Source of the DNA: Lytechinus pictus
Taxonomy: Eukaryota
Direction: 5' to 3'
Length of the DNA: 64,000 bases
Assembly (NCBI RefSeq): GCF_037042905.1
Contig: NW_026974140.1
Location: 4,216,001-4,280,000, forward strand
In this document: piece after piece, positions 2,057 through 60,666 of the stretch
Position numbering within the stretch: the first letter of the stretch is position 1
Layout: the number at the start of each line of letters is the position of its first letter
The notes under the pieces: generated by a model
Databases searched by the model: none
What the model saw: only the letters and a program-made list of their open reading frames with translations
Told to the model about the DNA's origin: nothing
Made by a program: the position numbers and the translations under genes

Positions 2057-3367
2057 CTTGAGCATGATGGTGTTCGTGGGGCAGCCTTAAGTTGGTTAAA
2101 AAAATTACTTAAAGAATAGATGTCAGTATGTAATGATTAATGGAGTTAAATCACAATCTAAGGAGGTTAAATGTGGTGTACCCCAAGGCTCGGTTCTGGG
2201 TCCATTATTGTTCTTGATTTATATTAATGACATTATAAATTCATCAAAATTGTTTACTTATTCACTATTCGCAGATGATACTTGCTTACTTTCCCATCAC
2301 AAAGATATGCATACTCTTATATTTTCAACTAACAATGAAATTAAAAATATATTTAAATGGTTTTGCTGTAACAAGCTTTTATTAAATGCTAGTTAAACTC
2401 AATATGTTGTCTTTAGAACAAGGGGTAAAAGAGTCCCTGAAGATACTAATCCATTATCAATCGGTGGCCATCAGATTAATCAAAGTCAAGATGTAAGGTT
2501 TCTGGGAGTTGTAGTTGATGATCATTTATCATGGAAAAATAACCTCAGTTATGTTTGTACTATTGTATCAAGGAGTGTTGGTGTCATTTATAAGTTACGT
2601 TTTTCTCTACCTCAGCAGACCTTAGTAACTCTTTACAATGCTATTATTATGCCACACTTAAATTATTGTAAAGTTGCATGGGGAAACACATATAGAAACC
2701 ATTTAAACAAATTGCTAATTCTTCAGAAGAAAATTATGAGGCTCATAACATATTCGAATTTCAGATGTCCAAGTATTCCTTTATTTCTACAATTGAAGAT
2801 TTTGCCTCTTGATGATTTAGTCTCCTTCAATTGTTTGATATTTATGTACAAATCACAATCCTCTCAAAACTGTTCATTTTTAAAAGATGCATTTGTTGTT
2901 AACTCGAATGTCCATTTGTACAATACACGGCAGAAAAATCTTATCCACCAACCACTTGCAAGAACAAATACTGCTTTGAATTCTTTTGTGATAGTTTGTA
3001 TCAAAGAATGGAATAAGTTACCACAAAGCTTTAGATCCAGTCCAACACTGCCCATATTTAAAATTTCACGTTGAAAATATTTATTTGAAAGATTACAAAG
3101 TGCCTCTTATTGATTGAATCTTGACAAACCATATGTGTGCGTGAGGGTGTGGGTGTGTGTGTGTGTGTATTTTTCTTATTTACTCTCTAGATTATCATTG
3201 TATATATTTTCCATCTCATTCTTGCTGTACTGTACTGTATAAGGGGCCCCTCTCACAAGTTCTGCTTCTATGTGGTCCCAAACCTATCATGTATTCTCAT
3301 TTCTTGTTATACTATGTAATATGTCTCTTGTTTTGATTGGTTTAAATAAACTTGAACTTGAACTTGA
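2057..3367 (+). mobile_element. 5'-truncated, decayed LINE (L2/Crack-like RT), antisense in an OCA2 intron
   Basis: GVPQGSVLGPLLFLIYIND and LFADDT in ORF 2133-2396, premature TAA, C-terminal ORF 2649-3074, 3' AATAAA(CTTGAA)n tail. Confidence 0.9.
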
Positions 3368-3638
3368 AAATCTCTCTCATGATCTGGTCTCCTCCTCTCT
3401 CTCTCTTTCCATCATTGCCTTTTTGTTGAACTATTTGATCGTTCCATTCCATCTCTTTATTTGCCCCTGTCTTTATCTTTCTAAATCTAATCTATTATTC
3501 TGACTTTCTTTCTATCACACTCTCTTTCTCTCTCCTTTGCTTCCTTCCTTTCTTACTCCAAGAATAGAAGCTAGCATTTATACTACTTGCTATTCCTTCT
3601 TTTGCTGATGCTTGAGTTGAGCTGACATATCCACTTAC

Positions 3639-3743
3639 CATTGCTGTTGTAAATGGTATGTTATCAATGAAAGATGACGCTAGGGCTGATACCCAGAGTA
3701 TGAGAATAAGAGCTACAGCTAATCTGGCATTAGGAGGAACATC
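3639..3743 (-). CDS. OCA2: OCA2 exon ([35 protein letters not shown])
   Basis: TAG/GTAAG boundaries, 105 nt, phase 0-0, DNIPF motif. Confidence 0.95.
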
Positions 3744-4060
3744 CTAGATTTGAAAGAAGAAAAGAGGAAAAGAGAAGATATTGTCACTTAAGAGTTGTCA
3801 ACTGCGTAATATACATTCAAACATCCCAAAACATTCATCACCTCAAGCAAACTGTAAAAATAGATACTAATAGGCATATTATTATCAGTATGACATAGGA
3901 ATAATAGCACGAGATCCTACTGTTGACAAACATACCAGATATAGTAACAATGGAATCCCTTCTTGTGGAGTTTGCCATAAATGCAGCAGACATTTAAAAA
4001 AGAAAATAATACTAACAAAGACGCAAATGAGCTTGAATATTTGAAAAGCAGGATACCTAC

Positions 4061-4120
4061 CTCAATAATACCAGCCACAAAGTTTCCAATATACTCAATT
4101 AGGCCAAGTTCTGTTAAACC
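4061..4120 (-). CDS. OCA2: OCA2 exon (GLTELGLIEYIGNFVAGIIE)
   Basis: CAG/GTAGG boundaries, 60 nt, phase 0-0. Confidence 0.92.
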
Positions 4121-5373
4121 CTGTAAATATTATCAAAATAAAACATAACGATGAACTCATCCCAATAATGACCAGTATCCATCAGAACTTAGAGAGCTGC
4201 AAAACAAAGACCTATATCTTCTCATGCACAACTTTGTCATATCGTTCAGTGCAAGCCTTGCGTGTGACTTGCGGGTGGCTATCTTTGCTACCCGCAGGTC
4301 ACGTGCATTGAGAGTATCTCGCATGCATCTCACACGCAGTTGCCCTCAGAAACGCACACAAGTCTAATTTGCAAGCAGAAAAGTTTTGCACAAAAATTTG
4401 TTGCGGGAGAGTTTTGAGCATGTTCGAAAGGCATGCACAGAATGATGTGACAGGGCCTTAACCAAGCGATTAGAAATGCAGGAAGCAAGATGGCCATTCC
4501 CACAAGATGCATGGCACGTGTAGCATATGGTGCGCGAGCTTTCTCTGCCTCAGCACCTTCTCTCTGGAATAATTTGCCGTTGAATTTAAGAATTTTACCA
4601 TCACTGGAGACCTTCAAATCTAAACTTAAGTCTTATCTTTTCTAACAGTAGTAGTTATTGGCACTTTGACACTCATCCAAACTTTCTCATTCTTTCTTTT
4701 CTTGTGCACCTCGGAATAGAATATTTCTAGATAGATGGCGCTATATAAATGCCTATTATTATTATAGTAAGCTTAACATATGCAAATCATCTTCTTCTCT
4801 GGGCTCCATAAAACAAAGATACTGTCTTGCAATCAATCACAAATTGCAACAATCCATATAGTATGTGCATATAGTTCAAGATATTCCCTATCAACTAATC
4901 AGAATCATGTACAATTTGCAATTAATTTCAAATATGAGAATTATGGTGCGGGTTGCCAAATAACACCGAGATTAGTAATTGATCATAAGAATAGAATTAA
5001 CTGCACTGACCACAATGCACGATCAATCGTAAAATGGTCTAATCGGTCACTAAGCTCTGCCTTACACGACTCTGATACCCCTTTCCAAAGTTCAATTCCC
5101 CCTCTTTAAAAAATAATTTTCACTTCCCTTCTCTCCTCGACAATCCTTTTCATATCTTTCCCATTCTTTTAATTACATAGTGTGTTGGCGCCAACCCGAA
5201 TTTGAAAAAAATGCTACCAAATAAGGGGAAAAAAAGAGAGTCTCATAACCCATTCCAACCAATGCCTTTACACGATCAGAGCATGCACATTTATTTACTC
5301 TTGGGTATCATCAATTCAGTTCTTGACAGTATAATGGTATAATCGTCTTGAAAGGTTTAGTTCTAAGACCCAC

Positions 5374-14319: not shown

Positions 14320-17013
14320 ATGTCAATTAAAGTCGAAGTCCAAATTTACTTTGAGATATAATCCTGTTATTTGATGAGATAAACCAATCATTATCAAATC
14401 CCTGCAGTATTTTCTAGCACCAGATACCGATTGGTAGAAAATGAATTGTAACTGGTCATACTTAATTGCACATAATGACTTTAATTTTGAGTTTCTGCCT
14501 GCATTGTAATGTACATAAAGTTTTGAAGGAAAAGTTGAGATTTCAGATATCTGCATTTTGTGTATTCCATGCTTAGTACAGTTATACTAAGAACATCGGG
14601 GAAAATGCAGGATCCCCAAATCTAAACCACTTTTACCCACAGACAGTTAGAGACCAATCTCTCTCTGATTTTGATCTATGGCAATATCTATGGCCCTAGG
14701 TGCCTGGATCACTTTAAATGTCACCTTAACTTCAAAGCTTTAATGATGATCTGTCAAGCCTATAGTCATCACAGGAATTCACTACTTGAGTTTAATACAT
14801 GTATTTGCACAATGACAAAAAGGCCTTTCCAAAGAAGGTATTAGTTTAGTATTAGTTTCCAAGGACATAATTAAAGGGTCAATTGAAGTTGATGGTTAAA
14901 TATCTTGCACTACATACAGTATACATTGTAATTGTATGCATCTATCTACTCATTTGCTTCAGAGGTTTGAAATGTGAGCCACGCTGAATGCAGCAATTTT
15001 ATAACTGTGTTCCAAAACCATGTCAGACTGAACCTTTCTAAACCGCCATAATTATAGGTTTCAATCCATGAGCGATGGTGATGTGGCCTATTTTTTCCAC
15101 GCGTACAAAGAAGCCATATCCAATCCCCATTGACCAATAAACATTGATTTTTTTTAAGGCAAGATCTATCAGTACATACATGAAAAGGTGTTTATTTATC
15201 TAGAAATTGGAAATTATGCTTCCTACTATTTTGTTTTCTAATCAAATGAAATCTCACTTTCTTTGTTGTTAATAATACAGATCAAATAGGGGTGTTAAAA
15301 TAATGTATATCATTTGCAAAGATCTGTAGGGTGAAGGCAAATTTTTGGTGAGATCTAATGCCAATGACCAATCAAGATCATCGTTACGTGCGCATGTTGT
15401 TCAATACACTGACCAGGAACCAATCAGAGTGGTTCTTTCACATTTGCAATGCACTGCAAACCTTTATATTACAGGACCCTGATGGGGATAAGATGAGGAG
15501 CTCATAATTGATATACATGTACATTATGGATTGCACACTAATTATTACAATAAACTTCTTCATTTTTTCTCAAAATTTGCCAAAAAAGGTTATGTTTACA
15601 CATAGGCATACCATTCTTGTTTAATAAAGGAAAGGGAACGGTAGATTTCAAAGGAAGAATGGGCGGCAACAAATAAATGCACATACAACATGCAGGCCAT
15701 TTGTATGCCAGGAACGGTTTTCATGCAAAAGACATTCACAGGCAGATATGTATAAAATAGGGATAAAACTGAATTACATCTATTAAAATCAACATTTTTT
15801 ATAATGTACATGTACCTAAAGGGCAATAAAGATATACAAAATTCAACGACAAATCAATCTAGAACTCTTTCTTCAATGCAAACAAATTTCGGCAAATATG
15901 TCGTCCAATCTAATTCAAAAAAGGATAAAAAATGCAAATACAGTGATTATCTAAAATTGGTATTCACTGATGCAGATGGGGTTTTATGACAAATTTTCAT
16001 AAAATGTTATTCTATTGTTCATGTATATAAGGCCAAGAAAGGTTCCAACTCCCCCTCAAAAAGAAAACTGAAATGGAAACCCAAATTTCAGGGAAAAAAA
16101 TGACACCATTCCTTGAAGAGAGAAAATACTATACCCGCCATACCATAACTTATCTAAAAAATTACGCTGTGTGTATCACAAATTTATCTAGTATTACTAC
16201 AGATATTAAGTGATGCTTGGTACACTGAGAATTTTAAGTACCTAAGAACTTCAGGATTGTTGAAATGTTATTATTATTAATTTCATAGATCATCGATCAA
16301 CAACCTTTATCATATTTGGGAAGTACGCCCCCTATTGTTTGCTGATATATTCATTAGTGTTTTTTGTATAATTATGAATAATTTGTGTGTCAAATGAGGT
16401 GACAAAGTGAACTAACTAAGAAATACCTGTTACAATTGGCTTTCCATAGTTAAGTTTAGACCAGAGTTTAGATTAAACCAGAGTTCAGAAGATGAGCCCT
16501 CATATCCAATTCAAAATTATGTTTCAAAATGACAAATTTCAAAAGCTTCCACCCATATTAATATCCACCTACAAAGATTGTACAAACATTGTTCCACTAC
16601 ATTAACAATAATAACTGCTCTGTCATTATTCAGAACAGAGGAAGGAAACAAGCAAATTGTCAACTGCAATCTATTAGTGATACCAAGGTTAGGGGGTTAG
16701 ATCTACGCAATGTTAATATAACCATGCACATCTACAATTAGTCAGGAAAAAATATCACATATTAGTTGAAAGAAATATCCATACATAGCACACAAGGGAA
16801 CCAGCAAAAAACAACCAATGCAGTTTGGGAGTCAGTGGCATTCATCAACTACTTACCAATACATAAGGATATCTGTTTTCCTGTCAAATGGAATCAATGG
16901 AGTGATGCATGGATAAAGATGTCATGATAAAATACTGATGAGAATATAAAACTGCTGATAATACTGTTATTGAATTATGCCATGCCTGATGTGCAAATAT
17001 GATATCAAAAGCT

Positions 17014-17103
17014 TCATCTGTAGATTATAACATGGATTTAATAAAATTTACTCCTATCATCTGTAGATTATAACATGGATTTAATGAAATTTACTCCAAT
17101 CAT
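17014..17103. repeat. 43-bp tandem duplication
   Basis: TCATCTGTAGATTATAACATGGATTTAAT repeated at 17014 and 17057. Confidence 0.85.
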
Positions 17104-17956
17104 GGATAATAAATTTATCCTTCATCATAATACATACTTTTCTTCATTCAATAAAGATATTACATATGTTGAATTACCATGTTGGTTCTATGAATATCAA
17201 TGCATAACACTTTAAAGGAGGTTGATTTCAGATACCACCTCAGTATCACAGGTGGTGACCTACTTTGTGACATCTCAAGTCAACTAATTAGTTTTACTAA
17301 TTGATTCTACAGGAATTACCCTTTCCAAATATTGCCAATATCATAAGAAAATGAAACAAGAATGGAGATTTGTTGCCACAAAACTGTTTCAAACAAGTGA
17401 AATGATTTCTTTGAAGGGTGGGTATGGAGAGTAGTTTAATTCATTACAGATAGACATGATGTGCATTGGATTGAAAATAAATCTATAATCCAATATGTCA
17501 GATATATATATCAAACACAAAAACAAAATGGTCTCAAGATCAATTATTGGAATATAATTAAAATATGAATGAACAGATGAAATAAGATGTCATATCAATA
17601 ATTTCACCTATCTTTCAGAATTTTTTATTTCAACTTTCAAATTTTTTTTTTCAGTTTTGAAATGTGTTTGGAGTTGACAAGAATACATGTGTGGTTCTGG
17701 AGGGGATTTAACTTTGTAGTGTTTTCAAAATGTTGCCCCCATCCGATAATTATGGAATAGTAAGGTCAACAAATTTGAAAATGGGGGCAACATTCATCAA
17801 TATGATTAAACAAAAATAAAACAAAACAAAATGGACCAAGTTAGTAAAGCAAATCCTTAGAAGTTTCCCAGATATTCTCTGAGACCTTCTCCATATTTCA
17901 AAAGATATAGTGTAATTCACAAAGATATGTTCAGTGAAATAGAGATAAATACTTAC

Positions 17957-18095
17957 TGCAGCTTCAATCTCTGAGTTGGCAACAATGATGACGTTTGGAG
18001 GGTCTCCGATGGCTGTAGCTGTACCTCCTATGTTTGAGAAGATTACTTCAGCTATCAACACATGCCTAGGATCAATGTTGAGTACCTCACAGAGG
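17957..18095 (-). CDS. OCA2: OCA2 exon ([46 protein letters not shown])
   Basis: AAG acceptor after a pyrimidine tract, GTAAG donor; NIGG..GDPPN signature. Confidence 0.93.
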
Positions 18096-18601
18096 CTTCA
18101 AGAAAAACATAAAAAGAGAAGGAAAACAAAAATACTGCTTGTTTGTTCTACAAAAAAAAAATATATCAATGTGGAAAAAACTGGTGAAGTAAAGTAAGAA
18201 AAAGGATCGATATCACACATTCAATTTAATTTCAATTTCTGCATACCATCAATAAATCAAGATCTTGGTTAGAGGATCTACTTAAACTATTAACTCCAAA
18301 TGCAACTTAAATTCAAGTTTAATCGCATGTAGTTGCAGCAGCTGTAGAAATAGAAGCAACAAGACCTGGAAATATATTTACATATTTTCCCCGGGTAGCT
18401 GCCCCCAAATAAAACAAACATACATGTATGAGCCTTCACATGAGAGAAATTAATAAAAAAGAAAAAGAAAATTATTTGTGGTATAACTTTCTATTGAATT
18501 ATGGAGAAGGGGGGGGGGGAGGGGCTATCAAGACACCCATTGTACATGATAATGTGGGGTGATATGCAACACACCAATCACATGTATCGTATTATTCTTA
18601 C

Positions 18602-18783
18602 CTAATAGTGACAGGGGTCATGAGTAGAATGGTAGTGACATTGTCCAAGAAGGCAGAAACAATACCAGAGAAGAGACAAAGAATGGTAACCAGCGTCCAG
18701 ATCTTTCCCTTAGCCAACTTGTAGGAGAGCAATGCACAGTAGTCAAAGAAGCCAGTCTCAGAAAAGATGGCTACTATTGTCAT
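18602..18783 (-). CDS. OCA2: OCA2 exon ([17 protein letters not shown]...[18 protein letters not shown])
   Basis: CAG/GTAAG boundaries, SAFLDNVTT motif. Confidence 0.96.
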
Positions 18784-19072
18784 CTGAAACAGAAAATAAA
18801 AGAAAAAGGAATATTATATACTGCGCTTCTACTCTGCCTCCTTATGTCCTTCTTGTTTATGATGATAATGATAATATGCAACATTTGTATAGCATTAACA
18901 TTTCCAAAAGCTGCATATCATTACCCTGGCATTAGCATAGCTCTCCTGATCAGATACTCACACATTTAAGGAATTCCTTCCTGGGTGGAGAGCGGTGAAT
19001 GTAGTGACAAAATTTTCCCCTATCTATTCTTCTCTACTCAAATCTTTAAAGAAATCCAAGAGTCATTGTCAT

Positions 19073-19204
19073 CTGGGAATCATTTCATGAAACAGTGATT
19101 TTCACCAACTGTTATAATCTACTGAAATCCTTTGCATCTGATTGGCTAAGAAAGAAGTAATCAGTGGAAATCACTGACAAGTCAATTTATGAAACACTCC
19201 CCAG
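19073..19204. mobile_element. Short MITE of a CCAATCAG-core family (relatives at 22380-27712 and ~63528-63670)
   Basis: CTGGGAATCATTTCATGAA ... TTTATGAAACACTCCCCAG inverted ends. Confidence 0.65.
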
Positions 19205-19228
19205 ATCATTTGATATTTAAGCACTCAC

Positions 19229-19366
19229 CATTCCCCAGAGTAGAGCGAGAACATCATAATCTAACCATGACATCACAACCTCTAAAGGTGGACGTGCGTT
19301 GTAGCTTGTCAACACAGCTAGTGTAGCAAAGGATCCTATCATGGCAGCTGTGGTCCTATGTACTAA
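19229..19366 (-). CDS. OCA2: OCA2 exon (LVHRTTAAMIGSFATLAVL...WLDYDVLALLWGM)
   Basis: CAG/GTGAG boundaries, VHRT motif, phase 0-0. Confidence 0.95.
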
Positions 19367-19811
19367 CTGGAAACAAAACATGGACAATTTAATACTGCAC
19401 CTGTTTGATCTTGGTCTATTCAGGGTTCATACAAGAATATAAAAATGCAAAGAGTTTTTTAATGAATATTCTAGTACTTTTCATTCATTTCTAATGGCTA
19501 TAGCCCCCCCCAAAAAAAAAAAATAAATAAATAAAAATAAAAATAGGAAGTAATAATAAAAAAATAACAATGACAAAAAGGAGAAAATAATAGCAGTCTC
19601 AATTATTTAGTGCAAAAATGGTTATTCAACATTAAAAAAATCCGGTTTCACAGAGCAGTTATATTGCCTAAATTATGATGTCACTAGATACACATACAAA
19701 ATGTAAGTTAAACACAGCCAAAGAATGAGCTTGATGTGCTACGTGGTATTAAACTTATCCTCATATTCCTAAACATACACAACAATGGAGCAGTCTGACA
19801 CTATGACATAC

Positions 19812-19971
19812 CTCAAATCCAATCAGGACATATACAGCAACTAAGATAATGGCAGCCCAAACCACCTCTTCATTTGATGATGAGGGTAAGAGGGTGTGGT
19901 CCGTTTGCATGGTTACCAAATCATCAATGTTGCTTTCAAATCGCAGCTCATAACTGGTATTATGACCACAT
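19812..19971 (-). CDS. OCA2: OCA2 exon (CGHNTSYELRF...EVVWAAIILVAVYVLIGFE)
   Basis: TAG/GTATG boundaries, phase 2-0; end of luminal loop plus TM2. Confidence 0.9.
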
Positions 19972-20843
19972 CTAACAGAAAGTGATTGGAAATCAAGTAT
20001 CAGTATTTTTATCATTCTAATAATATTTGTATAGACAAGATGATAGCATGTCCTTGTATCAATCAAATATTGCAAAATAAATATGAATAGTGGACAGTTC
20101 CCTATTAAAATGACATAATTGGCAAAATTGCAAGTTACATGTATAAAGAGGAAGGGTACTTCTGACATTATACAAAGACATTATACAAATGCATTATGCA
20201 AATGCATCATTTCAACAATTAAATTATCTTCATCTCAATTGAATTGCTTTTGATGGAGATGTCAAGCTCAAACTTAGTATGATTCCAATGTTATGATGTT
20301 CAAACATTACCTTTGATTCTATAGATGTCTTCAATACAATGTTCAAATGAGGGATATGAAATTGTTAGTTTTCCAAATATGTTTAAGGGGGCTAGCCAGT
20401 CTGGTAAAGCTAGTGTACTCTGCACATTGTAATTCAAGTGATATTTTGTCAATATTAGTACATGCACATTACATGCATCATACTTTAAAAGACATATTTT
20501 TTCCAAATGTTTAATTCATCATTAATTATTGTGTTTTGAAGAAAGCAATGATGAATCATTTTTTTCATTGTACACACAATAACCTCTTATTGTTTATAAC
20601 AGCATATTTTTGTGAGATTGATCCACAAAAAAGACTAAATAAATACTTTTTACTTGCTCCAAACATACATGTACATGAAAATTGCTCTTTATCACATTCA
20701 TCTGAAAGACTCAGTGTAATATAGCTGGTATTTCATGGAATTAGGAATAAAGTATAAAAGTTTGGCAATGAAATAAAGTAATGCAAATTGAATATCTTCA
20801 TGTACAGGTACAATTATGTGTTACACTATTTATATGTGCTTAC

Positions 20844-21078
20844 CTTTCTTTAAGATTAGAGTATTTCTTCTCTATTTCTTCCCAGTAAATACTTTCTGAT
20901 AGTGGATATTCCCGATAGACGTTATAGACTTCTGAAACCTCATAACAAACCTCTTGAAAGTTGTTATAGCCAACCAGTCGGACTGTGATATTCTCTGTTG
21001 AGTTGCCTAATTCTACAATTGGACCCTTAAAGTTGACTTTTATTATAACATTTCCGCCAAGATCTGATATTTTAGAGG
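20844..21078 (-). CDS. OCA2: OCA2 luminal-loop exon (SKISDLGGNVIIKVNFKGPIVELGNSTENITV...YSNLKE)
   Basis: Stop-free 235 nt, phase 1-2, N-glycosylation sequons NST and NIT, GTAAG donor. Confidence 0.85.
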
Positions 21079-21575
21079 CTGGTCCAGTGGGTAGGATTAA
21101 GGAAAATATATGTACACTCTACAAATTAGATTGATGCATTGCCACAGGATACTAGCCGGGTCACCATGGGACTCAAACTTAGTACACAATATTGGTTTAT
21201 TATGTATCACTTCTAATAATATACAAAACAAAGGAGTTACTAATTGAGCAAAGGTCACAAAACGCCACAAATTTTTACGGTTACTCCCCCATTATTGGAT
21301 CAGAGAAAAGTGTCATTCAACATTTTAACCCTTACCAGAAATTGTTTTCCCTTGTCTTAGTATATCATATTGTAACTATGCCTATAGCACTGGCTGAACA
21401 AAAAGCGGTATTGTGTGAACATGACAAACATTAATGTAGGATGATATATTTCCCAAATCATGGTATTACAAAAGGAAATCTTTTAATGTAATCCAAATAT
21501 GCAACATCATCCAGATCTTCTTCTTTGTTTTGCCTGATTATTGATATAGATAGGAAACCATTCTTTGAAGGATAC
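21079..21575 (-). other. U12-type (minor spliceosome) GT-AG intron
   Basis: 5'ss GTATCCTTC; branch site TTTTCCTTAAT (21106-21096), branch A about 18-19 nt upstream of the CAG. Confidence 0.85.
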
Positions 21576-21648
21576 AATAAGGATGATCATGTGATATAGA
21601 GAATATTTCAAGTTGAGGCAGTACTTCATCTTTCAAGGTAAAGAATAC
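21576..21648 (-). CDS. OCA2: OCA2 exon (VFFTLKDEVLPQLEIFSISHDHPY)
   Basis: Pyrimidine tract plus CAG acceptor, 73 nt, phase 0-1. Confidence 0.85.
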
Positions 21649-22461
21649 CTGAAGAAAAAAACGAGAATCAAATAAAAAAAGATTAAGAATTAAACTGATT
21701 ATACAAATTTCCCAATTAGCTAATAATGTTATAAACTAGCAATGAAGAATTATTTTGTGATGGGATATTACACCGAATGGCTTTTGATACTTCCAACGGT
21801 AAAGTGGTGAACTAATAATGGGAAAATCTAGTTTCAATGTTTATAAAACAGCTCTTTAGAATTCCAAATCAATGATACTCCTTGCCATCGAGACTCATTT
21901 TACTTTTTTTTTACTTGGGGTGGAGCTGGGAATGAAAGGTCTAAATCCCCCTCTAATGAATATTCCTTCAATGACATTTAAAAACAATGTTAATCTGTGA
22001 TATATTCCAATTTGGATTTCTATAAGAATCTCATTTAATTTCCCAGAGTTAGAATAAATTGAAAAGTCATGTTAAACTTCAAAAACAGGAAACGTGGCAT
22101 ATATGGCTTTCCTTTCGTACCACTCAGGAACCTGCCTCTCACATCAGGAATTGGATGGCCTCTTGATCATGCAGGCATAAAATAGGATCCAAAATAGGCA
22201 GAGCTGCTACAAGTAGCTTTTATCATTGCCCATTTCGGTGATAATTTACAGACCAATCAAAGAGACTTTACAAAATTTCACATACAATCTAATATAGGTT
22301 TATCAATGTATGACTATACAGGGAAATGTTTGAATTAGGAAGGGTTCACATTGAAGTCTCCCTGACAGTCTAGGAGACCTGGGAAACATTTCATGAAACG
22401 ATTACTCAGTGATTTTCACCAACTGATTTGCTCTCAGCCAATCAGATACAAGGGTTTGCAG

Positions 22462-23241
22462 TAGTGCTGTTATCGATAACCTCTTATTGCTAGTCTTGTC
22501 GATAATCGCATGTTTTTTGCCACTGAGCGATATCGATAACTTTTCTCTCGCTGTCGATAATACCCATGATTATGTAGGGACATGACAGTGATTTTCCGTG
22601 ATTGCGGAAAGTGGCTTTTCAAACAGAAATTCACAAAAAACATATTTTTTCCCTCAAAATGCACAGAACAGCAACAGAAATTACTCCAAAATCTCAACAA
22701 AATATGAACATTTCCCAGCCACAAAATATGATCTCACTTCGCTATAATCATGACAATCCAAACATCGTGACTGCACTCGACTCCATTCGATCGTATCAAA
22801 AACATTCACAAGCGCCAGCTTAATTTTAGCGTAGAAGGCAGCACACGGCCGTGTTGCTGCCCTCTACATTTGAAGATGTACAGCACGATATGACGGATAG
22901 GCGAAAGTCGTTGACCGCTCAATACGATGTCTAAAGAGCCTCCAAATTATCAATAAAACTTCATCCAACCCTAAAATAATGCTAGTAACATGAAAGGTAA
23001 GGATGTATTTATGCTGAATATATTTGTTAAAAGATGTTATGTAATCGTTTACATCCGATGATTTTAAAGTGTTCTTGGTACAGTGGCAGATACAAATTTT
23101 GACCAACGCGAGGATTGTGACATCGCTAATCAATGCATAAAAAATGCATATTGATTACGTGCTTTTGTCAATAGTTATCGATATCGGTAAGATATTTTAG
23201 CGATATATCGACAGAGAATTTTCTTACCGATAACAGCACTA
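22462..23241. mobile_element. hAT-like non-autonomous element
   Basis: TIR TAGTGCTGTTATCG; decayed 8-bp TSD GTTTGCAG/ATCTGCAG; subterminal ATCGATA repeats. Confidence 0.75.
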
Positions 23242-23257
23242 ATCTGCAGTAGCTTAT

Positions 23258-26200
23258 TTCATTTTTCATTTCATTTATTGGTTTTTGCAACATTTTTCAT
23301 AACAAAATTCTGGACAAGAAAATACATATCTGAAACTTGACATCAAGATAATGAACAATAGTTTTGTATATAAATCATCAAATATATCTTACATAAATGA
23401 AAATCATTAAGTGGTATTTTCTGTTTCACAATAAAAAATAGGATGGTTGCAAGGGTCGTCACAAAAGCAAAGCTTGAAAACGTAACAACCCTGGAATATA
23501 GCCAAAATAATTAATATCTATTGTCATTTAAACGTGCAGGTGCATGAGGGACTGGGGGGGGGGGAGATGCTTGGTCCTTAGCATGGAATTTTAGAAAATA
23601 ACATGTTTTGTTGTTTGATTTTAATTTATACATGTTCTAGATAAAAGTCAATGTCTAATTAAAATAATGATAACAATTGTAATGATTTTCTTTTTTAATT
23701 TGTTAGGTATTGGTTTAATTGCATTTCTTTTATAGTTCGTTTAAAGGAATAAAATGATCTTGTCAGCTTGAGTGAATCTGGCAATGCATTCCAAATATCA
23801 GGTCCATGATGTCTTAGTGTTTTATGTGCAAATAGTGTCCTGGGATTGTTTAAGTGAATATTATTGCATGTTCTTGTTGGATATGAGTGTAAATTGTTAT
23901 TATATGAAAATAAATCCGTGAATACCGGAGGAAGCATGTCGTAATTATATCTATACATAAAAAGTGCTATTTGTAAAGTATTAATATCATTTATCTTAAA
24001 TATTTTCAGACGATAAAAAAGAGGGTCTGTATGTGAAAGATATGCAGATTTGGAACACATTCTAACCGCTTTCTTTTGCAATAAAAGTATATGATTAAGC
24101 CTTGTTTTGCAGCTATTCCCCCAAATGAGGTTACAGTAGTGAATATATGGTAAAATCAATGTATTATATATCATAACAAGAGATTTCTCTGGTAAGATTT
24201 GTTTTAGTCTACATAGTATTCCAATTCCTTTAGCTACAGAGGAAGACACGTTGCTTATGTGCGGAGTCCATGATAAATGATTGTCTATTGTTATACCAAG
24301 AAATTTTACGTATTATTTTTTATCTAAAGGCACATTATCAATTTTTATATCTTGTATAAAATTTTCATTTCTATGAGATGATTGAAAATGCATAATATGA
24401 GTTTTACTTATGTTAAGAGATAACTTATTACATTTAAACCATGATGAAACTTTATTTAATTCTAAATTCATTATATTTATTAATTCTGGTAAGTTCTTGT
24501 GAGATAACAAAATATTAGTATCATCGGCAAATAAGATGAAAGAAAGAATGGAAGATGAATCTACTATATCATTAATGTATATTAAAAATAACAAAGGTCC
24601 CAGAATAGAACCCTGCGGGACGCCGCAATTGATAAACGATAAAGGAGACTTAACATCATTGATAAAAATGTATTGTTGCCTATTGGAAAGATAACTCTTA
24701 ATCCATGACCAAGCAATGCCCCTTATCCCGTAATTATACAACTTATGAAGTAAAATACCATGGTCAATGGTATCGAAAGCTTTACTTAGGTCCATAAATA
24801 AAGCAATTGTGTGATTTTTTTCTGAAAGTGAGTTTACAACTTTGTCCAGCAATTTGGTTATTGCGAAATCGGTAGAGAATTTTTTTCTAAATCCAAACTG
24901 GGCTGGTGTAATAATCTTATTAAATGACAAAAAGGAATCCAATCTTTTGTAAACAATTCTTTCAAATATTTTTGATATGCATGGTAAAAGAGAAATAGGC
25001 CGATAATTTGTAACTTGAGTAGGATCATCTTTTTTATAAATCGGGACTACTTTGGCTATTTTCAATAGCTCAGGAAAGCATCCAGTTGAGAGTGATAAGT
25101 TAAAAATATGTTCCAATGGAGAAACAATACATGCAGTCAGACCGCAGGTCCCTATGCTAATGAGCAAAAAGGCCAGATTCATCCAAATCATCTCGTGGCT
25201 GAATCCTCCTCCTTGCAAAATCTCGTGATTCGTGAGATTTTCTTTCTCTAAGAATTTACCTGTTTTAACTTCAAGTTAAATGAAATATTATTACACGATC
25301 AGATAGAGTAAAAGTTACTCTTTCATATTGGTCATTTACTTTGTATACAATATTTTGTTAAATAAGTAAATTTCTGGCCTGAAAATGTGCCTAAAAATTG
25401 AATTTTCTTCCTCTGTTTTCTTTTGCAAATTGTGCAAAACTTTTTATTTTGAGCCTCAATGATATCTATATCACCATAAAGCTGAACATCTGTACTTTCT
25501 CACAATGCCACTCTTGATATGCGGCACCTTTTAATCGGGTCAAGATCACACTTTTCCCACCAAGGTACAAGACGAGATTTCTGAAATGTTGTACTTGCAT
25601 GAAATCCAGAGTTCTGATTGGCTGGATAAGGTTCACAGAACAACAGGCGCGGGGTATTTGAGGAGATTACCACATGGGAAGTGTGACCTTCCCACGAACC
25701 CAGGCACTGGAACCGTTGGAATTTGCCATTGTGTGGTCTCTTTGACCAATCACAGTGCAGTATTCTTGTTTTCAAGCTGCTTTATGTACTTGGCAAATGA
25801 AAAGTGTGATCTTGACCCGATTAAACCAATTCTTATTTTGAAACCTATATCATTTCAAAGCATACATATTCAGCTTTATCATGATATAAAAATCATTTGG
25901 GCTCAAACAAAAATAAAGTGTGAAAATAGCAGCTTTTGTCAGGTGAAAATATTTATTTTGTAGCATAATTTAGATCAAAATTTTAACCTATATTACAAAA
26001 TCTTTGAATAAATCCAAACACATGACCTGAAAGAATGATTCTTCTTCTTTACAATGGTACCAAATTCATGAAATTCGATGCTCAATTAGAGCAGCAATGA
26101 CCGAATGAAAAGAGGTGTTTTGGTCCGCATCAAGCTCATTAAATATGCAAAACATCTCAAGTCATGAATATCAATTGGATGAAAGAAGCCACTTTCTTGG

Positions 26201-27660
26201 GACCTGCAGTCTGACTGCATGTTACAATTTGCTTTAACAGTTTTGTACTAATACCATCATAGCCTGTTGACTTCTTTGATGTTAAAGCTTGTACTATTTT
26301 AATTATTTCATGTCGGTCTGTGGGAGTAAAAAACATTGTATTTTGATTTGGCTGGGAAAGATATTCTTTAAAATTCGTATTGTCACTAACTATCTTGGAA
26401 GCTAAATTGGGACCGATGTTTGTAAAGAAACGGTTGAATGATTGTGCGATTTCAGCCGGTTGAGATATTTCTTCATTGTCTATCTTAAGACTGTCCCTGT
26501 TGCTATGTGGTTTGCTTTTGTTAATCAATTTGTTTATAACTTTCCACGTGGCATTTAAATTTCCTTCTGCATCTTTTAATTCCTTACAATAATAATCTTT
26601 TTTGGATGAGCAGATTACACTGTTAAGAGTATTGCGATATTTTTTATACTTCTTAAGACTTTGTTCAGACGGTTTAGAAATATACAATTTATAAAGTTTA
26701 TTGCGTTTTTTAATTGAACGTATAATTCCTCGAGTGATCCATGGGTTTCTTTTATCATTTTTGCGTTGTTTTCTTTGAACAAGTGGTATATTTTTATTAT
26801 AATAATGAGTTAGTTTGTCAATAAAGTATTTGTAAGCTCTATTAACATCATGCTGAACCATAATTTCATGCCAGTCTTCTCTTTCTAAGTCTTCAATTAA
26901 GGCCGAAATAGTATTAAAATTTTCTTTTCTATATTTTCTTTTATTCGGCTTTTTATTATCATTAAGCTTCAGAAGTGGAGAAATAAAAAATATTGGTAAG
27001 TGATCCGTAATATCATAAGTAAAAACACCACTATGATTATTATCATTAAAAGAATTGGAAAATATGTTATCAATTATTGTCGCTGACATTGGAGTTATCC
27101 TAGTAGGTATATTTATACATGGATAAAAGTCATATGAAAATAGTGTATTCAAAAATGTATTTATGATATTCTCACTGGCATCATGATTTCCGATTAAATG
27201 TGACGTGCTTTGTATATGATGTGACAAGTCAATATTGAAATCGCCCATTATGTAAATATGTTTATTTTCTCGTGAAATTTTATCCAATTCACTATCTAAG
27301 TTTTCAAGAAAGTTGTTAATATTGCTACCTGGGGGTCTGTATAATGTTCCTATGACTACATTTTTTCCAACTTTATTATCTATTTCAATGAATAAACTTT
27401 CTATATCTTCAAAATGAATATCTGTTCTAAGTTTATATTTGATATTTGAATTAATATACATTGCCACCCCTCCTCCTCTTCTTTTCCTCCTATCAATGTG
27501 TATCATGTGATAACTTGGTAAATTATAGATATTTGGAGAATTTGACTTCAACCAGGTTTCCGAAATACCAATGACTGAAAAAGAATAATTGTTTAGAGAA
27601 GTTAAAAAAGTTTCGACAGAGTCAAAGTTTTTGCAGATACTTCTGGAATTGAAATGTATA
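23258..27660 (-). mobile_element. LINE (L2/Crack-like) with near-complete APE endonuclease + RT ORF2, inactivated by one nonsense codon and one insertion
   Basis: ISETWL, YRPP, MGDFN and TDHLPI (endonuclease); YRPISLL, DLSKAFD, GVPQGSILGP and LFADDT (RT); AATAAA plus a (TGAAA)n-like tail at 23258-23279. Confidence 0.93.
25134..26217. mobile_element. Non-autonomous DNA transposon with 4-bp CATG TSD inserted in the LINE (superfamily unassigned)
   Basis: TIR CAGTCAGACCGCAGGTCCC / GGGACCTGCAGTCTGACTG; CATG at 25130-25133 and 26218-26221. Confidence 0.85.
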
Positions 27661-28352
27661 TAACAATAGTCAGTGAATATATCTGACCACTTGATTTATG
27701 AAATGGTATCAGATGAAGTAAAGCTCACTAATCTGTCTTCCATAATACAAGGCTTTATAGCGAATGACTGGTATGATTGACAGCACACATACATGTAATG
27801 ATCAATGCGTTCCACTGTACATAAAAATCAGTCCTGTCATTGACCAGGTGCAATACAAATCAACATATTGATAACATCTACAGGTCAAATGTCATTGCTT
27901 CAACAACCAAACTTCCGTCCTGAATGTGTTATCCACAAATGTGCACCTGTGGTTTTTATCATTGGATTCATTCAACAAAATATTTCTCCTTTAAAAAAAC
28001 CTCTTGAACATTTAGTTCTGTTAATAGGTCTATTTTTGTTACATCATCTACATGTATCTGGAACATGGACTGGAAAGTTGATGATTTCTTGTACAATGGT
28101 CACACACCAGAACTGACGAAATCAGGAAAAAGGTCTTTAATTTTCTAGTCTTGTCATGCTATAAAGGTGGTCAGGAGAATTAAGAAACTATTCTAAAATG
28201 CATTGAGTGTGATGTCAAAGATCTGTGAATATTCAAGATCACTGTGACGAGAGCAACTACATGTACTTTCTTTCAACTTATTTATCATTATTTGACCTCT
28301 CTGACGATTATTTTGTCGGGGAAAATGCTTAACTTAAGATTTATGAACTTAC

Positions 28353-28410
28353 CGTGCAGACAAACATGGACAGAAATAAAACAGCAATCTTTGTATATCT
28401 CAGATAAAGC
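28353..28410 (-). CDS. OCA2: OCA2 TM1 exon (LYLRYTKIAVLFLSMFVCT)
   Basis: CAG/GTAAG boundaries, 58 nt, phase 2-0, basic residues followed by a hydrophobic helix. Confidence 0.85.
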
Positions 28411-52474: not shown

Positions 52475-53199
52475 CTGTATATAGAATAAATAATCACATA
52501 TCGAAGGGGTATGTCCTCTCGAACACGAGTATAATAATGATGATGATGGTTACACTTACACAATCTATTTGAAAACAATGTTATTTGGTAGTGTACTTCA
52601 ATGCTTTTGTTCCTTGTCAACAGTATGGATGCTAAATATTTCACTGCTCTTCATCCTCAGAAAACAGCACTACAGAAATTCAATCATTGCTATCATTATA
52701 ACTCTTATTACAAGTAGCAGATGAAAAATATACCAATCAAGTGGGCATATCTTATGAGACTACACAATCAAAATGTTGCATTTTGGGTAAGGGATCAAAT
52801 ACAGAGTAGTTCAAAACTGCACAAATTAAATTCCATTCTGAGAGTTGGTCAGCATTTTAGAGCAAGAAAATATAAGATTGAGTAGGCATTCATATGGGAA
52901 ATATTAATAAGAGCATTGCAATCTTCTTATAGTTGCAGTCTCTTTTGATTTTACAGGTTATCAAATCACAAAAAATATGATTCTCTTCTTTAGAACAGGC
53001 AGTTTTAGACCAAATATGAAATAAATATTGGCCCTCCCTCAAGTTTATTTTACAAGCTGTTTCATGATAGAAAAAGATAGACTACAGTGTTGAATGTAGC
53101 ATTAGACATTATCATTAAGGGCAGTTTATATGCCCATGGGATATGCAATATTTGGTAGTTAACTATTGAGATCTCATGTTATCTACCGAATAGACTTAC

Positions 53200-53302
53200 A
53201 ATTTAAGTAGAAGTGATGATGTAACAACAGATACACTTGACATCGCCATGGCACCAGCTGCCATCCAAGGTTGAAGGGCTATACCCCACTGCATCAACGC
53301 AC
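53200..53302 (-). CDS. ATP7: ATP7 TM8 exon (ALMQWGIALQPWMAAGAMAMSSVSVVTSSLLLK)
   Basis: CAG/GTAAG boundaries, phase 1-2, MxxSS motif. Confidence 0.93.
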
Positions 53303-53650
53303 CTGTAAAGAGAATGATATCAGAGAGAACATTACCACAATCAATAGGTAGAAAGTAAAGCATGGCACCAGCTGCCATCCAAGGTTGAAGGGCTATACCC
53401 CACTGCATCAACGCACCTGTAAAGAGAATGATATCAGAGAGAACATTACCACAATCAATAGGTAGAAAGTAAAGCATGGCACCAGCTGCCATCCAAGGTT
53501 GAAGGGCTATACCCCACTGCATCAACGCACCTGTAAAGAGAATGATATCAGAGAGAACATTACCACAATCAATAGGTAGAAAGTAAAGCATGGCACCAGC
53601 TGCCATCCAAGGTTGCAGGGGTTTAACCCACTATATCAATGCACCAGTAA
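53247..53650. repeat. 114-bp tandem repeat: 3 identical units plus a diverged partial unit, spanning the acceptor and 5' half of the TM8 exon
   Basis: CATGGCACCAGCTGCC starts at 53247, 53361, 53475 and 53589. Confidence 0.95.
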
Positions 53651-53824
53651 GTAATATAACTATATTACAATTGATAAATATGAATCAAACTATTGCACTA
53701 GTAGACACTCATATTTACCCAGAAGGAGGAATAGTGTCTCCTTTAATTTACTTTTATTTTTAATGGTAGCAATCCCACATGAAATGATTAGAGAGAGAAA
53801 ATGTACCAAGAGTAGACTTTAAAG

Positions 53825-53956
53825 NNNNNNNNNNNNNNNNNNNNNNNNNNNNNNNNNNNNNNNNNNNNNNNNNNNNNNNNNNNNNNNNNNNNNNNNNNNN
53901 NNNNNNNNNNNNNNNNNNNNNNNNNNNNNNNNNNNNNNNNNNNNNNNNNNNNNNNN
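53825..53956. other. Assembly gap (132 N)
   Basis: Run of N. Confidence 1.
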
Positions 53957-54219
53957 ATTTCACAAAAATAATCAGTGTATGAAAGAGGCTTAAACAGTCT
54001 CTACACTTTTGTAAGATTGTGATTATAGAAATATAAAAAACAAATAGAAATCACCTTCTTAAATTATTATAGTTTTAAAGCTTTATGCTTGCTCAAAAAA
54101 GTATATATCTCATAAAAACAAACATGGACAGGATATTTTAATGCAAAAGACAAAAAGAAAACACAAAATATCATTAGAGATCAAGTCTAATGAGAGAATA
54201 AACTGAAAGTATACATTAC

Positions 54220-54337
54220 CTGCGGCAATGGGAATGGCAATGATATTATAGACGAGAGCAAACATGAAATTGATGTGAATCCTTTTAACAGTCTTATGTG
54301 ATAGGTCAATGGCTGCGACCACATCTTGGAGATCATC
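54220..54337 (-). CDS. ATP7: ATP7 TM7 exon ([39 protein letters not shown])
   Basis: CAG/GTAAT boundaries, YN motif. Confidence 0.95.
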
Positions 54338-54529
54338 CTGAATATAAAAGATAGGTCAGAGAATAATTTCATATAGCTGTTCTTAACATCAGGCATGGCT
54401 TTATAATAAAGACTGGTATGGTCTTGCAACATTTGCTACTCCGCTAGTTTCTCTGAAGATATAAAGGGGGGTGAGGGTTGTGATAGGGTATTAAGTTCAG
54501 GTACATGTAAGGATTAGGATTGATGTTAA

Positions 54530-56418
54530 AGGAGAAATATATTGAAAATCGTAAAAATGGAGAATCATATATCAAATCAAAGGCGAAAATAAGGAGAACA
54601 CGATGATGTACATCATTTATCATGGAGACCGATGGAACTCAGTTAATTGATAGTTTAAAGTTCTCTCTCTGAATGCTTCAAACACGCAGAATTACGTCCG
54701 CGAAATTGGGGATTTTTTATGACGTCACTTTCTGTACGAGAGGCGTGATTGGCTCTCCCACGTGAAGCTCCACTTGCATGCAAAACCTGTTGCGAGGGTA
54801 CGTTTTCTCCACATTGTCACTGAATACTTCGCGATCACGAAATGAAAGAAAACCCAGAATTTTATCTAGATTTGGATTTTCAAATTGATGATTTTGAAGA
54901 TGAAGAGAATGATGATGAAATGAACAACAAAGTGACGTAGTTGGAGGTAAATTGGGGGAATTACGCCGATGATGATGAGTCGGACAATTCAACTTGCAGC
55001 ACGATCACATGCCGATTCGCTACCTAACTCATGCAGCATGCTAAGTGCTAGCTACACCGCGCGGGCCAAATTGAATTCATGAAAATGAATTACCACACTG
55101 TCCAGACAGAGTCTCTTACCTCTGTGACTATGAAGAAGGAAAATAATGATAAAACTGTACTTACAAACAGTCAAGTGAATGTAATCCGAACCTGAAGGCA
55201 ACTCAACGAATAGCAGCAGACGATATATGCACCGACGATGAACTTCATGTGGCTGGGATAGATTGTCACTCGTTCTGTTAGATGTAATTTTTATCTCATT
55301 AATTTGACAAAATTACGAAAATCGGGGAATTATTTATCTATATAAAAAAAAAGTAACATCTCGTATAATTTCTAAATTACGATAAAACATTTTTTGAAGG
55401 AAAACGTTGAGGTAAATTAAAATTAGATGTAAAAGATCCCCAACATGCGTAGCTTGATTGAGAGCTGTGCAACACGTGCATAGATCTACTCTCTCAGCCA
55501 AGGCGCGATCAAGCAATACGGCATGTTTGTGATTTTGATTACGATCACATATACGAGCTTTTAAAAGGTTTTATCGTAATTTAAAAAATAATACGAGATG
55601 TTACTATATTTTTATATAGATAAATAATTCCCCGAGTTTCGTAATTTTGTCAAATTAATGAGATAAAAATTACATCTAACAGAACGAGTGACAATCTATC
55701 CCAGCCACATGAAGTTTATCGTCGGTGCATATCGTCTGCTGCTATTCGTTGAGTTGCCTTCAGGTTCGGATTACATTCACTTGTTTGTAAGTACAGTTTT
55801 ATCATTATTTTCCTTCTTCATAGTCACAGAGGTAAGAGACTCTGTCTGGACAGTGTGGTAATTCATTTTCATGAATTCAATTTGGCCCGCGCGGTGTAGC
55901 TAGCACTTAGCAGCTGCATGAGTTAGGTAGCGAATCGGCATGTGATCGTGTTGCAAGTTGAATTGTCCGACTCATCATCATCGGCGTAATTCCCCCAATT
56001 TACCTCCAACTACGTCACTTTGTTGTTCATTTCATCATCATTCTCTTCATCTTCAAAATCATCAATTTGAAAATCCAAATCTAGATAAAATTCTGGGTTT
56101 TCTTTCATTTCGTGATCGAAGTATTCAGTGACAGTGTGGAGAAAACGTACCCTCGCAACAGGTTTTGCATGCAAGTGGAGCTTCACGTGGGAGAGCCAAT
56201 CACGCATCTCGTACAGAAAGTGACGTCATCAAATTCAAGTCAATTCGGAGACCGATGCGAGGCATATTTCGGAGAGGCATTTTGAGCGTTTTTTAATCGG
56301 CGATTTTCACCTTATGTATTATTTTCGTTATTTTTGAATGACCCACTAATAATCCCCACATCATTACCTTTCCATTGACATATAATAAGACCACATTCAT
56401 AATCAATATAGTTCTCCT
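54530..56418. mobile_element. Kolobok-type non-autonomous element with a ~1.5-kb internal foldback
   Basis: TTAA|AGGAGAAATATATTGA ... TCAATATAGTTCTCCT|TTAA; near-identical inverted arms 54719-~55397 and ~55559-56229. Confidence 0.88.
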
Positions 56419-57190
56419 TTAAGGAAAGTTTTGAACCTTTTGCTTAGTGTGTGCAGTGTCAGTAGGAGCAATTGTTGCAGGAGCAAATGTAATGGATCCA
56501 CATGGCAACCCCAAGAAGCCCAAAAAGTGTCTCACCTAATTAGCTGTAGTAAAAATATTACGATATTGAATTACAGTTTTTCGAGGAAATACAAGAAAAA
56601 AATGAACATTTTACATACAGTCAGTTTGTTGATGTTATGAAATACTACAAGCTCACCTTTTGACACTTCATATTCTTCAAGCTATGTTTGGATTTACAAG
56701 TAGCTTTATAAAACTGTAGATTACGTTGTGCATGTCTTAATGAACAAACTGAGTGTAATGTGCCAATTTTTTTTTAACATTTTAACTTTAATTCAAGTTA
56801 TCCAATTGAAAACTTTTCTTTAAGTTCATTTTTTTTTTTTTTAAGATTATGTCTGTGTCAATCTTGGAACAAATTTCTGGGAGGTAAAAGATGCATGAAA
56901 GAAGAAAAATCCAATAATCCAACCAAGCTGTGATTAAAATGATTCAGAATCCAATCGCTGGTCATATTACATTGATCATAAAATCATGTGCCACTATAAA
57001 TAGCCCAATGAAACATTTTTAGATATTTGACAAGATTCCTTCCCCCCCTGAAAAAAATCAATCATATTCAATTGCTTATTAAAGAAATCAAATCAACTAT
57101 TTTCACAATAATAACAAAATAAATTTGCATTAATCCTTGTCATATCGTTAATCGAATTAAGTCTAATTTCCAGTTTCTCTCTTTACTTAC

Positions 57191-57394
57191 TCTGATCAAG
57201 ACCACATTGGCTGCCTCTACAGCAACATCTGTGCCTGTTCCTATAGCAATACCGACCTCAGCTTGAGCCAAGGCAGGTGAGTCGTTGACCCCATCTCCTA
57301 CCATGGCGACAAGATGACCTTTCTTCTGAAGTTCCCTGACCTTATCCACTTTGTGTTGAGGAAGAACTTCAGCAAAGATGTGCCCAATACCAAC
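57191..57394 (-). CDS. ATP7: ATP7 exon ([15 protein letters not shown]...[18 protein letters not shown]...VLIR)
   Basis: TAG/GTAAG boundaries, hinge motif GDGVND. Confidence 0.97.
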
Positions 57395-60496: not shown

Positions 60497-60586
60497 TTCT
60501 CAAAATCTCTGACTTTGCCAAGGATGGATGAAAGGGAAGTGATCTGACAGGCCCTCCTGTGGTTGGCTGGAAACCCTGTCACCTTG

Positions 60587-60666
60587 GACCCCATTTCATA
60601 GTAAAATCATAACTTTGCTATTAATGTAATAATGGCAGAATTACAATTCTTTATGAAATGGGGTCC
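60587..60666. mobile_element. Tiny MITE
   Basis: GGACCCCATTTCATA ... TATGAAATGGGGTCC. Confidence 0.7.

What the first reader, a model, noticed from the sequence alone, without database searches (positions are those of the whole stretch)
21079..21575. U12-type minor-spliceosome intron in OCA2
Seen on the minus strand: exon..CCT TAT T|GTATCCTTCA at the 5' end and TTTTCCTTAATCCTACCCACTGGACCAG|CC at the 3' end, with no classical pyrimidine tract. The phase 1 junction joins the two exons in frame. Established: RTATCCTT and TTCCTTRAY placed 10-20 nt upstream of the 3' splice site define U12 introns, which are rare and often rate-limiting. No other donor identified in either gene has this signature. 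Inference: OCA2 output depends on the minor spliceosome, and retention would truncate the protein just after TM1. A second in-phase CAG (exon start 21063) could remove 5 residues.
Basis: partly seen in the sequence, partly recalled or inferred. Interest (0 to 1): 0.7.

Follow-up and report, generated by a model that had tools for sequence, protein, structure and literature searches.

The report
Conserved U12-type intron in OCA2

Summary
On the minus strand the intron 21575..21079 starts with GTATCCTT and carries TTCCTTAAT 18 nt before its terminal AG. It joins a 73-nt exon (21648-21576) to the next exon (21078-20844) in phase 1.

- **RNA:** transcript contigs from three samples join 21576 to 21078 exactly.
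- **Machinery:** the genome holds full-length U11, U12, U4atac and U6atac snRNA genes.
- **Conservation:** the intron at the same alignment column has a GTATCCTT donor in a sea star, a sea cucumber, a tick and a coral. It is decayed in a bee, U2-type in Aplysia and absent from an intronless fly gene.
- **Prior knowledge:** the MIDB tables of Olthof et al. 2019 already list a minor intron in human and mouse OCA2. The human one lies directly after the 73-nt exon 6.

So this is a true U12-type intron, probably older than the cnidarian-bilaterian split, but an already known feature of the gene. A low-depth unspliced contig over this intron is no deeper than those over two neighbouring U2 introns. 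The scan noted other U12 introns in this genome (SET/TAF-I, UFD1), not this one on other DNA.

The parts
28353..28410 (-). 58-nt exon encoding the first half of TM1 (LYLRYTKIAVLFLSMFVCT). It is flanked by cag| and |GTAAGT.
   Evidence: Sequence. The loose end of the transcript contigs at 21649 matches this exon. The 58-nt exon is conserved in Patiria, A. japonicus and Stylophora.
21649..28352 (-). 6.7-kb U2-type intron (GTAAGT ... T-rich tract, CAG), phase 0. It holds a broken non-LTR retrotransposon.
21576..21648 (-). 73-nt exon A (VFFTLKDEVLPQLEIFSISHDHPY + 1 nt), covering the end of TM1 and the start of the luminal loop.
   Evidence: Transcript contig pieces 21576-21649 in X1, X2 and X3. 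The 73-nt exon is conserved in five other species.
21079..21575 (-). U12-type GT-AG intron, 497 nt, phase 1.
   Evidence: Joint 21078/21576 'skips 497, CT..AC, both=0' in three RNA samples and in X23.
21568..21575 (-). U12-type 5' splice site GTATCCTT (exon|intron ATT|GTATCCTTCA).
   Evidence: Predicted U1 pairing is only -1.3 kcal/mol, against -6.9 to -10.3 for six neighbouring introns. Its pairing with this genome's U6atac is the strongest of the seven.
21096..21104 (-). Branch-point sequence TTCCTTAAT (in context TTTTCCTTAATC). It is complementary to GUAAGGAAAAU of this genome's U12 snRNA.
   Evidence: Duplex energy -12.6 kcal/mol.
21079..21080 (-). 3' splice site AG. It is the first AG after the branch site, 18 nt from the branch A.
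20844..21078 (-). 235-nt exon B (luminal loop, with NST and NIT glycosylation motifs). It ends in phase 2 like the orthologous 241-nt exon of echinoderms.
   Evidence: Contig pieces 20844-21078. Translation. Orthologues.
21538..21540 (-). TAA stop that would end the protein 12 codons into the intron if it were retained.
21064..21066 (-). In-phase downstream CAG, a possible alternative acceptor that would remove 5 residues. No use was seen.
   Evidence: Sequence. Only the 21078 acceptor appears in the contigs. It lies 33 nt from the branch A.
17957..19971 (-). Next four RNA-confirmed exons: C 19971-19812, D 19366-19229, E 18783-18602, F 18095-17957. All have GTRAGT-type U2 introns.
   Evidence: Exon E hits Pfam CitMHS at 5.6e-17.

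Best explanation
This is a U12-type (minor-spliceosome) GT-AG intron of the OCA2/P-protein gene. It sits in phase 1 just after the first transmembrane helix. The inferred mechanism is as follows. U11 recognises the GTATCCTT donor. U12 pairs with TTTTCCTTAAT and bulges a branch adenosine. U6atac later replaces U11 at the donor. The first AG, 18 nt downstream of the branch, is used as acceptor. The intron is the positional orthologue of the minor intron catalogued in human and mouse OCA2. It has kept its U12 signals at least since the cnidarian-bilaterian ancestor. Shown here: the junction, the motifs, the snRNA genes and the conservation. Inferred: that the minor spliceosome is the machine that removes it.
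For: Motifs and coordinates.

RNA: three transcript contigs of 3.2-4.0 kb from separate samples, plus X23, join 21576 to 21078 with no ambiguity. The contigs lack all five introns in the stretch laid.

Machinery: U12 (114.6 bits), U6atac (134.8), U11 (112) and U4atac (91.8) are all full length. Their recognition sequences are intact: U11 5'-AAAAAGGGC, U12 GUAAGGAAAAU, U6atac AAAGGAGAGAAGG.

Contrast with six neighbouring introns: U1 pairing is -1.3 against -6.9 to -10.3 kcal/mol, U6atac pairing is the best at -6.8, and the pyrimidine tract is the weakest at 0.65.

Orthologous introns, in the same alignment column and phase 1:
- Patiria GTATCCTTAT...TCCTTGAC and A. japonicus GTATCCTTTG...CCTTAAT
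- tick GTATCCTTTT...TTCCTTCAC
- coral GTATCCTTTT...CTTAAC

None of the roughly 75 other introns mapped in those four genes has this donor.

Literature: Olthof et al. 2019 (PMC6717393) lists OCA2 and Oca2 minor introns in Tables S1 and S2, with 5'ss ACTGTATCCAAA. The human intron ends at chr15:28022500. With c.574-19 at g.28022592 (PMC13311137) that is directly after a 73-nt exon 6. PMC12956336 reports Oca2 as a minor-intron gene in several arthropods.
Against: No functional test of minor-spliceosome dependence is possible here. No formal intronIC or PWM score was computed. The U11 and U12 duplex energies alone do not discriminate, because T-rich tracts of U2 introns pair as well with the A-rich snRNA segments. 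Position +9 is C rather than the consensus T. The runs used are only guessed to be RNA by the tool; their RNA nature is inferred from contigs that lack all five introns. The later intron taxonomy cited in PMC12956336 places mouse Oca2 among genes whose best intron is only 'minor-like or hybrid'. So in some lineages the class of this intron is borderline.
Confidence: 0.9

Rival explanations
1. The intron has U12-like signals but is removed, wholly or partly, by the major spliceosome. This would make it a 'hybrid' or 'minor-like' intron on its way to U2-type, as appears to have happened in the bee and in Aplysia.
For: Class drift at this very position: bee GTATCTTG and Aplysia GTAAGT. Mouse Oca2 is ranked minor-like or hybrid in the newer taxonomy. 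The 3' region is 65% pyrimidine and ends in CAG.
Against: The donor has almost no U1 complementarity: ATT|GTATCC, -1.3 kcal/mol. Both U12 motifs are consensus-perfect over 8 and 9 positions, and the branch-to-AG distance of 18 nt fits U12 rules.
Confidence: 0.07
2. It is an ordinary U2-type intron whose two U12-like motifs are chance matches.
For: Each motif alone occurs at the chance rate in the window.
Against: Both motifs sit exactly at the RNA-confirmed boundaries. The same donor octamer recurs at the orthologous intron in four other lineages, including a cnidarian, where neutral intron sequence would long have been randomised.
Confidence: 0.02
3. The skipped form is not a transcript but a processed DNA copy or an assembly artefact.
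For: The tool only guesses that X1-X3 are RNA.
Against: X1-X3 have zero depth over every intron and full exon coverage. The same multi-exon contig appears in three samples. The exon structure matches orthologous gene models.
Confidence: 0.01

Closest known systems
Human OCA2 intron 6 and mouse Oca2 minor intron (MIDB; Olthof et al. 2019, PMC6717393, Tables S1 and S2)
   Same: Same gene. Same position directly after the 73-nt exon that ends TM1, phase 1. GT-AG subtype with a GTATCC donor and a CCTTGA-type branch site.
   Different: The vertebrate donor is GTATCCAAA, weaker at +7 to +9, and the introns are 3.9-9 kb. Here the donor is GTATCCTTC, the branch site matches the full TTCCTTAAT consensus, and the intron is 497 nt. 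Mouse was later down-ranked to minor-like or hybrid (PMC12956336).
Orthologous introns mapped here: Patiria miniata, Apostichopus japonicus, Haemaphysalis longicornis, Stylophora pistillata
   Same: GTATCCTT donor, phase 1, the same alignment column, and preceded by the 58-nt and 73-nt exons (85 nt in the tick).
   Different: Branch sites vary (TCCTTGAC, CCTTAAT, TTCCTTCAC, CTTAAC), as do lengths (136-1057 nt).
Canonical U12-type GT-AG introns, for example MIDB entries such as AGTGTATCCTTT / GTTTCCTTAATT
   Same: In the same 12-mer format this intron reads ATTGTATCCTTC / TTTTCCTTAATC, nearly identical to high-scoring human minor introns.
   Different: Nothing of note. It is a textbook example.

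Membership tests
U12-type (minor-spliceosome) intron | 5' splice site RTATCCTT at intron positions +1 to +8 | tested here: met
   GTATCCTT at 21575-21568, exactly at the RNA-confirmed donor.
U12-type (minor-spliceosome) intron | Branch-point sequence TTCCTTRAY roughly 10-20 nt upstream of the 3' splice site | tested here: met
   TTCCTTAAT at 21104-21096. The branch A at 21097 is 18 nt from the last intron base, and there is no AG in between.
U12-type (minor-spliceosome) intron | Weak or absent polypyrimidine tract and poor U1 complementarity | tested here: met
   Pyrimidine fraction 0.65, the lowest of 7 introns. U1 duplex -1.3 against -6.9 to -10.3 kcal/mol. The tract difference is modest.
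U12-type (minor-spliceosome) intron | Host genome encodes U11, U12, U4atac and U6atac snRNAs with intact recognition sequences | tested here: met
   All four are found full length above the Rfam cut-offs.
U12-type (minor-spliceosome) intron | The predicted junction is used in RNA | tested here: met
   Joint 21078/21576 in the contigs of X1, X2, X3 and X23.
U12-type (minor-spliceosome) intron | Positional orthology with catalogued or independently recognisable U12 introns | tested here: met
   for four invertebrate lineages. for the human and mouse MIDB entries.
U12-type (minor-spliceosome) intron | Probabilistic score (intronIC or MIDB position weight matrices) above threshold | not tested
   No such tool or matrices were available. 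Only the consensus match and a comparison with printed MIDB 12-mers were made.
U12-type (minor-spliceosome) intron | Splicing depends on minor-spliceosome components | not testable with these tools
   This needs knock-down of U11, U12, U6atac or RNPC3 in the organism.
OCA2 / P protein (CitMHS-type transporter) | CitMHS domain and best reciprocal similarity to animal P proteins along the gene | tested here: met
   Exon E hits PF03600 at 5.6e-17. There are 11 colinear tblastn blocks to the Patiria P protein. The source names of the hits are 'P protein'.

The most novel reading that the evidence does not exclude
The OCA2 minor intron may be one of the few U12 introns kept at one codon position from cnidarians to mammals. 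It would then be retained because slow or regulated minor splicing at the TM1/luminal-loop boundary gates production of the transporter. Lineages that converted or lost it (Aplysia, bee, fly) would have escaped that control.
Probability: 0.12. Interest if true: 0.4.

Novelty: already known. Interest (0 to 1): 0.2.

Why it matters
The result gives a firm annotation. It fixes the exon boundaries of OCA2 in this genome, shows that the gene needs correct handling by gene predictors that ignore U12 signals, and adds a well-documented case of an ancient minor intron. That case comes with lineage-specific decay (bee), conversion to U2-type (Aplysia) and loss (fly). It opens no new question: minor introns of this type, and this one in OCA2, are already in the databases.

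Tried and rejected
- **N-terminus by homology:** tblastn of the N-terminal 320 residues of four homologues gave only weak hits upstream of exon A. One of them led to the TM1 exon. The N-terminal exons upstream of 28410 were not resolved.
- **Amphioxus:** the gene model P0015 lacks the N-terminus, and the upstream DNA of L014 gave no clear match. The amphioxus state is unknown.
- **Mammal locus:** the lynx gene spans 409 kb, so no DNA was served.
- **Look-ups with no gene on record:** Malaya P0122, Stylophora P0052 and Acropora P0171.
- **Duplex energies:** U11 and U12 energies were tried as a discriminator but are confounded by T-rich tracts.
- **'U12' hits in albinism papers:** these were not in the main text and say nothing about intron class.
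- **Olthof 2024 supplements:** none are held.
- **Preferential retention:** the only unspliced contig over this intron (X23, depth 2) is no deeper than those over two U2 introns (depths 9 and 10.9). Contig depths cannot rank retention, so nothing can be concluded either way.

Full report
**Observation.** Read on the minus strand, the window shows ...CATCCTTATT|GTATCCTTCAAAG at 21576|21575. It shows ...ATATTTTCCTTAATCCTACCCACTGGACCAG|CCTCTAAAATATCAG at 21079|21078. The donor octamer GTATCCTT occupies 21575-21568 and the branch motif TTCCTTAAT occupies 21104-21096. The second A of that motif is 18 nt from the last intron base, with no AG in between. Taken alone the motifs are not enriched in the window: RTATCCTT occurs 6 times against 6.0 expected, and TTCCTTRAY 7 times against 4.8 expected. 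Everything therefore depends on whether they lie at real splice sites.

**The gene.** Open stretches on the minus strand from about 270 to 28410 match animal P proteins (OCA2). A 61-residue exon (18783-18601) found 908 relatives. The best named ones are P proteins of Apostichopus japonicus, Patiria miniata, Aplysia, Branchiostoma and others. The Patiria protein gives 11 colinear tblastn blocks, and the exon hits Pfam CitMHS at 5.6e-17. The peptide made by joining the two exons of the finding aligns without a gap across the junction to the sea-cucumber protein (E = 1e-4) and to several others.

**RNA evidence.** A word search found four runs of the same organism (X1-X4) that hold about a fifth of the words of 17800-21750, which is roughly what the exons make up. 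Three of these (X1-X3) and a fourth run (X23) were laid on 17000-22500. Single contigs of 3.2-4.0 kb in X1, X2 and X3 cover only exons. They join 21576 to 21078 ('skips 497', CT..AC on the plus strand, no positional ambiguity). The contigs also contain four further junctions, all GT..AG.
- The confirmed exons are A 21648-21576, B 21078-20844, C 19971-19812, D 19366-19229, E 18783-18602 and F 18095-17957.
- The loose end upstream of exon A matches a 58-nt exon at 28410-28353 that encodes the first half of TM1.
- Together these exons translate into 328 residues without a stop.
- Only the 21078 acceptor is seen. The in-phase CAG at 21066-21064 is not used in any contig, although contigs drop rare forms.
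- X23 also carries low-depth unspliced contigs. The one over this intron has depth 2; those over two U2 introns have depths 9 and 10.9. There is thus no hint of preferential retention, but contig depth cannot settle this.

**The machinery.** The 812-Mb genome encodes full-length U12 (4 copies, best 114.6 bits), U6atac (134.8), U11 (112) and U4atac (91.8). Their recognition segments are intact: U11 begins AAAAAGGGC, U12 carries GUAAGGAAAAU and U6atac carries AAAGGAGAGAAGG. UUUUCCUU of the intron pairs with AAGGAAAA of U12, and an A of the following AAU is left to bulge as the branch.
- The donor has almost no complementarity to a generic U1 5' end: -1.3 kcal/mol, against -6.9 to -10.3 for the six neighbouring introns.
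- It has the best U6atac pairing of the seven introns (-6.8) and the weakest pyrimidine tract (0.65).
- The U11 and U12 duplex energies by themselves do not discriminate, because T-rich tracts pair with the A-rich snRNA segments.

**Comparative evidence.** I mapped six orthologous proteins exactly onto their own genomic loci. Each has a phase-1 intron in the same alignment column as ours; the tick's is two columns off because its exon is 85 nt. Where the upstream exons could be mapped they are the conserved 58-nt and 73-nt pair. That intron reads:
- Patiria GTATCCTTAT...AATCCTTGAC(N18)AG
- A. japonicus GTATCCTTTG...AACCTTAAT(N13)AG
- the tick Haemaphysalis GTATCCTTTT...TTCCTTCAC
- the coral Stylophora GTATCCTTTT...GACTTAAC(N10)AG
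- the bee Frieseomelitta GTATCTTGTC, with no clear branch motif (decayed)
- Aplysia GTAAGTAG with a pyrimidine tract (converted to U2-type)

A P-protein-like gene of the fly Anastrepha has no introns at all. None of the other introns mapped in these genes has a U12 donor. An octamer kept inside otherwise unconstrained intron sequence in echinoderms, an arachnid and a cnidarian cannot be chance. It dates the U12 character of this intron to before the cnidarian-bilaterian split.

**What is already known.** Olthof et al. 2019 (PMC6717393) list, in their MIDB tables, a minor intron in mouse Oca2 (9051 nt) and human OCA2 (chr15:28018558-28022500). The 5' splice site is ACTGTATCCAAA and the branch sequences are TTCACCTTGATG and TTCTCCTTGACA. 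PMC13311137 places c.574-19 at g.28022592. Exon 6 therefore runs from 28022573 to 28022501, which is 73 nt, and the catalogued minor intron starts at the very next base. PMC12956336 adds two points. [quoted passage not shown] Oca2 is classed as a minor-intron gene in several arthropods.

**Mechanism and consequences.** The best-supported reading (0.9) is a GT-AG U12-type intron removed by the minor spliceosome. If it were retained, translation would add 12 residues (CILQRMVSYLYQ) and stop at the TAA at 21540-21538, just after TM1. The transcript would then encode no transporter and would be a likely target for decay. Whether splicing of this intron limits OCA2 output is not shown. The main rival (0.07) is that the major spliceosome contributes, as in 'hybrid' introns. 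Chance resemblance and artefact are effectively excluded.

**Verdict.** The observation and the interpretation are both right. The feature is a textbook minor intron and the counterpart of one already catalogued for this gene. The deep conservation, with decay, conversion and loss in single lineages, is a tidy but unsurprising addition.

Noticed in passing
window 16856-16879 (-): A 24-nt phase-0 micro-exon (GAAAACAGATATCCTTATGTATTG, ENRYPYVL) lies between exon F (ends 17957) and the exon starting at 8926. It is present in the transcript contigs of X1-X3 as the loose end at 17956. It is absent from the Patiria, A. japonicus and other P-protein models. It holds the window's other minus-strand ATATCCTT inside this gene, which is exonic and not a donor.
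   Followed up: partly
window 23698-27695 (-): A broken non-LTR retrotransposon lies on the gene's strand inside the 6.7-kb U2 intron upstream of exon A. It has an APE endonuclease ORF at 26160-27695 and a reverse-transcriptase ORF at 24316-25275, split by stops. Further RT-like ORFs lie at 2100-3071 (+) and 57804-60233 (+).
   Followed up: partly
window 19024-19207: Contig word depth is very high here (2300-4400, against 20-60 for the OCA2 exons) in all four runs. It centres on 19108-19149 inside the D-E intron, with a 1-nt deletion at 19131. This is probably a short repeat that is abundant or highly expressed elsewhere in the genome.
   Followed up: no
L017:2919-3059 (Frieseomelitta varia) and L013:12173-13280 (Aplysia californica): The orthologous intron is GTATCTTG in the bee, which looks like a U12 donor that lost one C and has no branch motif. 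It is GTAAGT with a pyrimidine tract in Aplysia. These look like two independent exits from the U12 class at the same position.
   Followed up: partly
L016:501-2771 (Anastrepha obliqua): The P-protein-like gene is a single uninterrupted ORF of 756 codons. All introns have been lost, or the copy is retroposed.
   Followed up: no
window 53000-64000 (-): A copper-ATPase (ATP7-like) gene lies upstream on the same strand, with exon-like ORFs at 57143-57394, 60675-60983, 61284-61517, 61977-62267 and 62966-63232. No RTATCCTT occurs on its strand. An N run at 53825-53956 and tandem copies at 53199-53630 lie at its 3' part.
   Followed up: no
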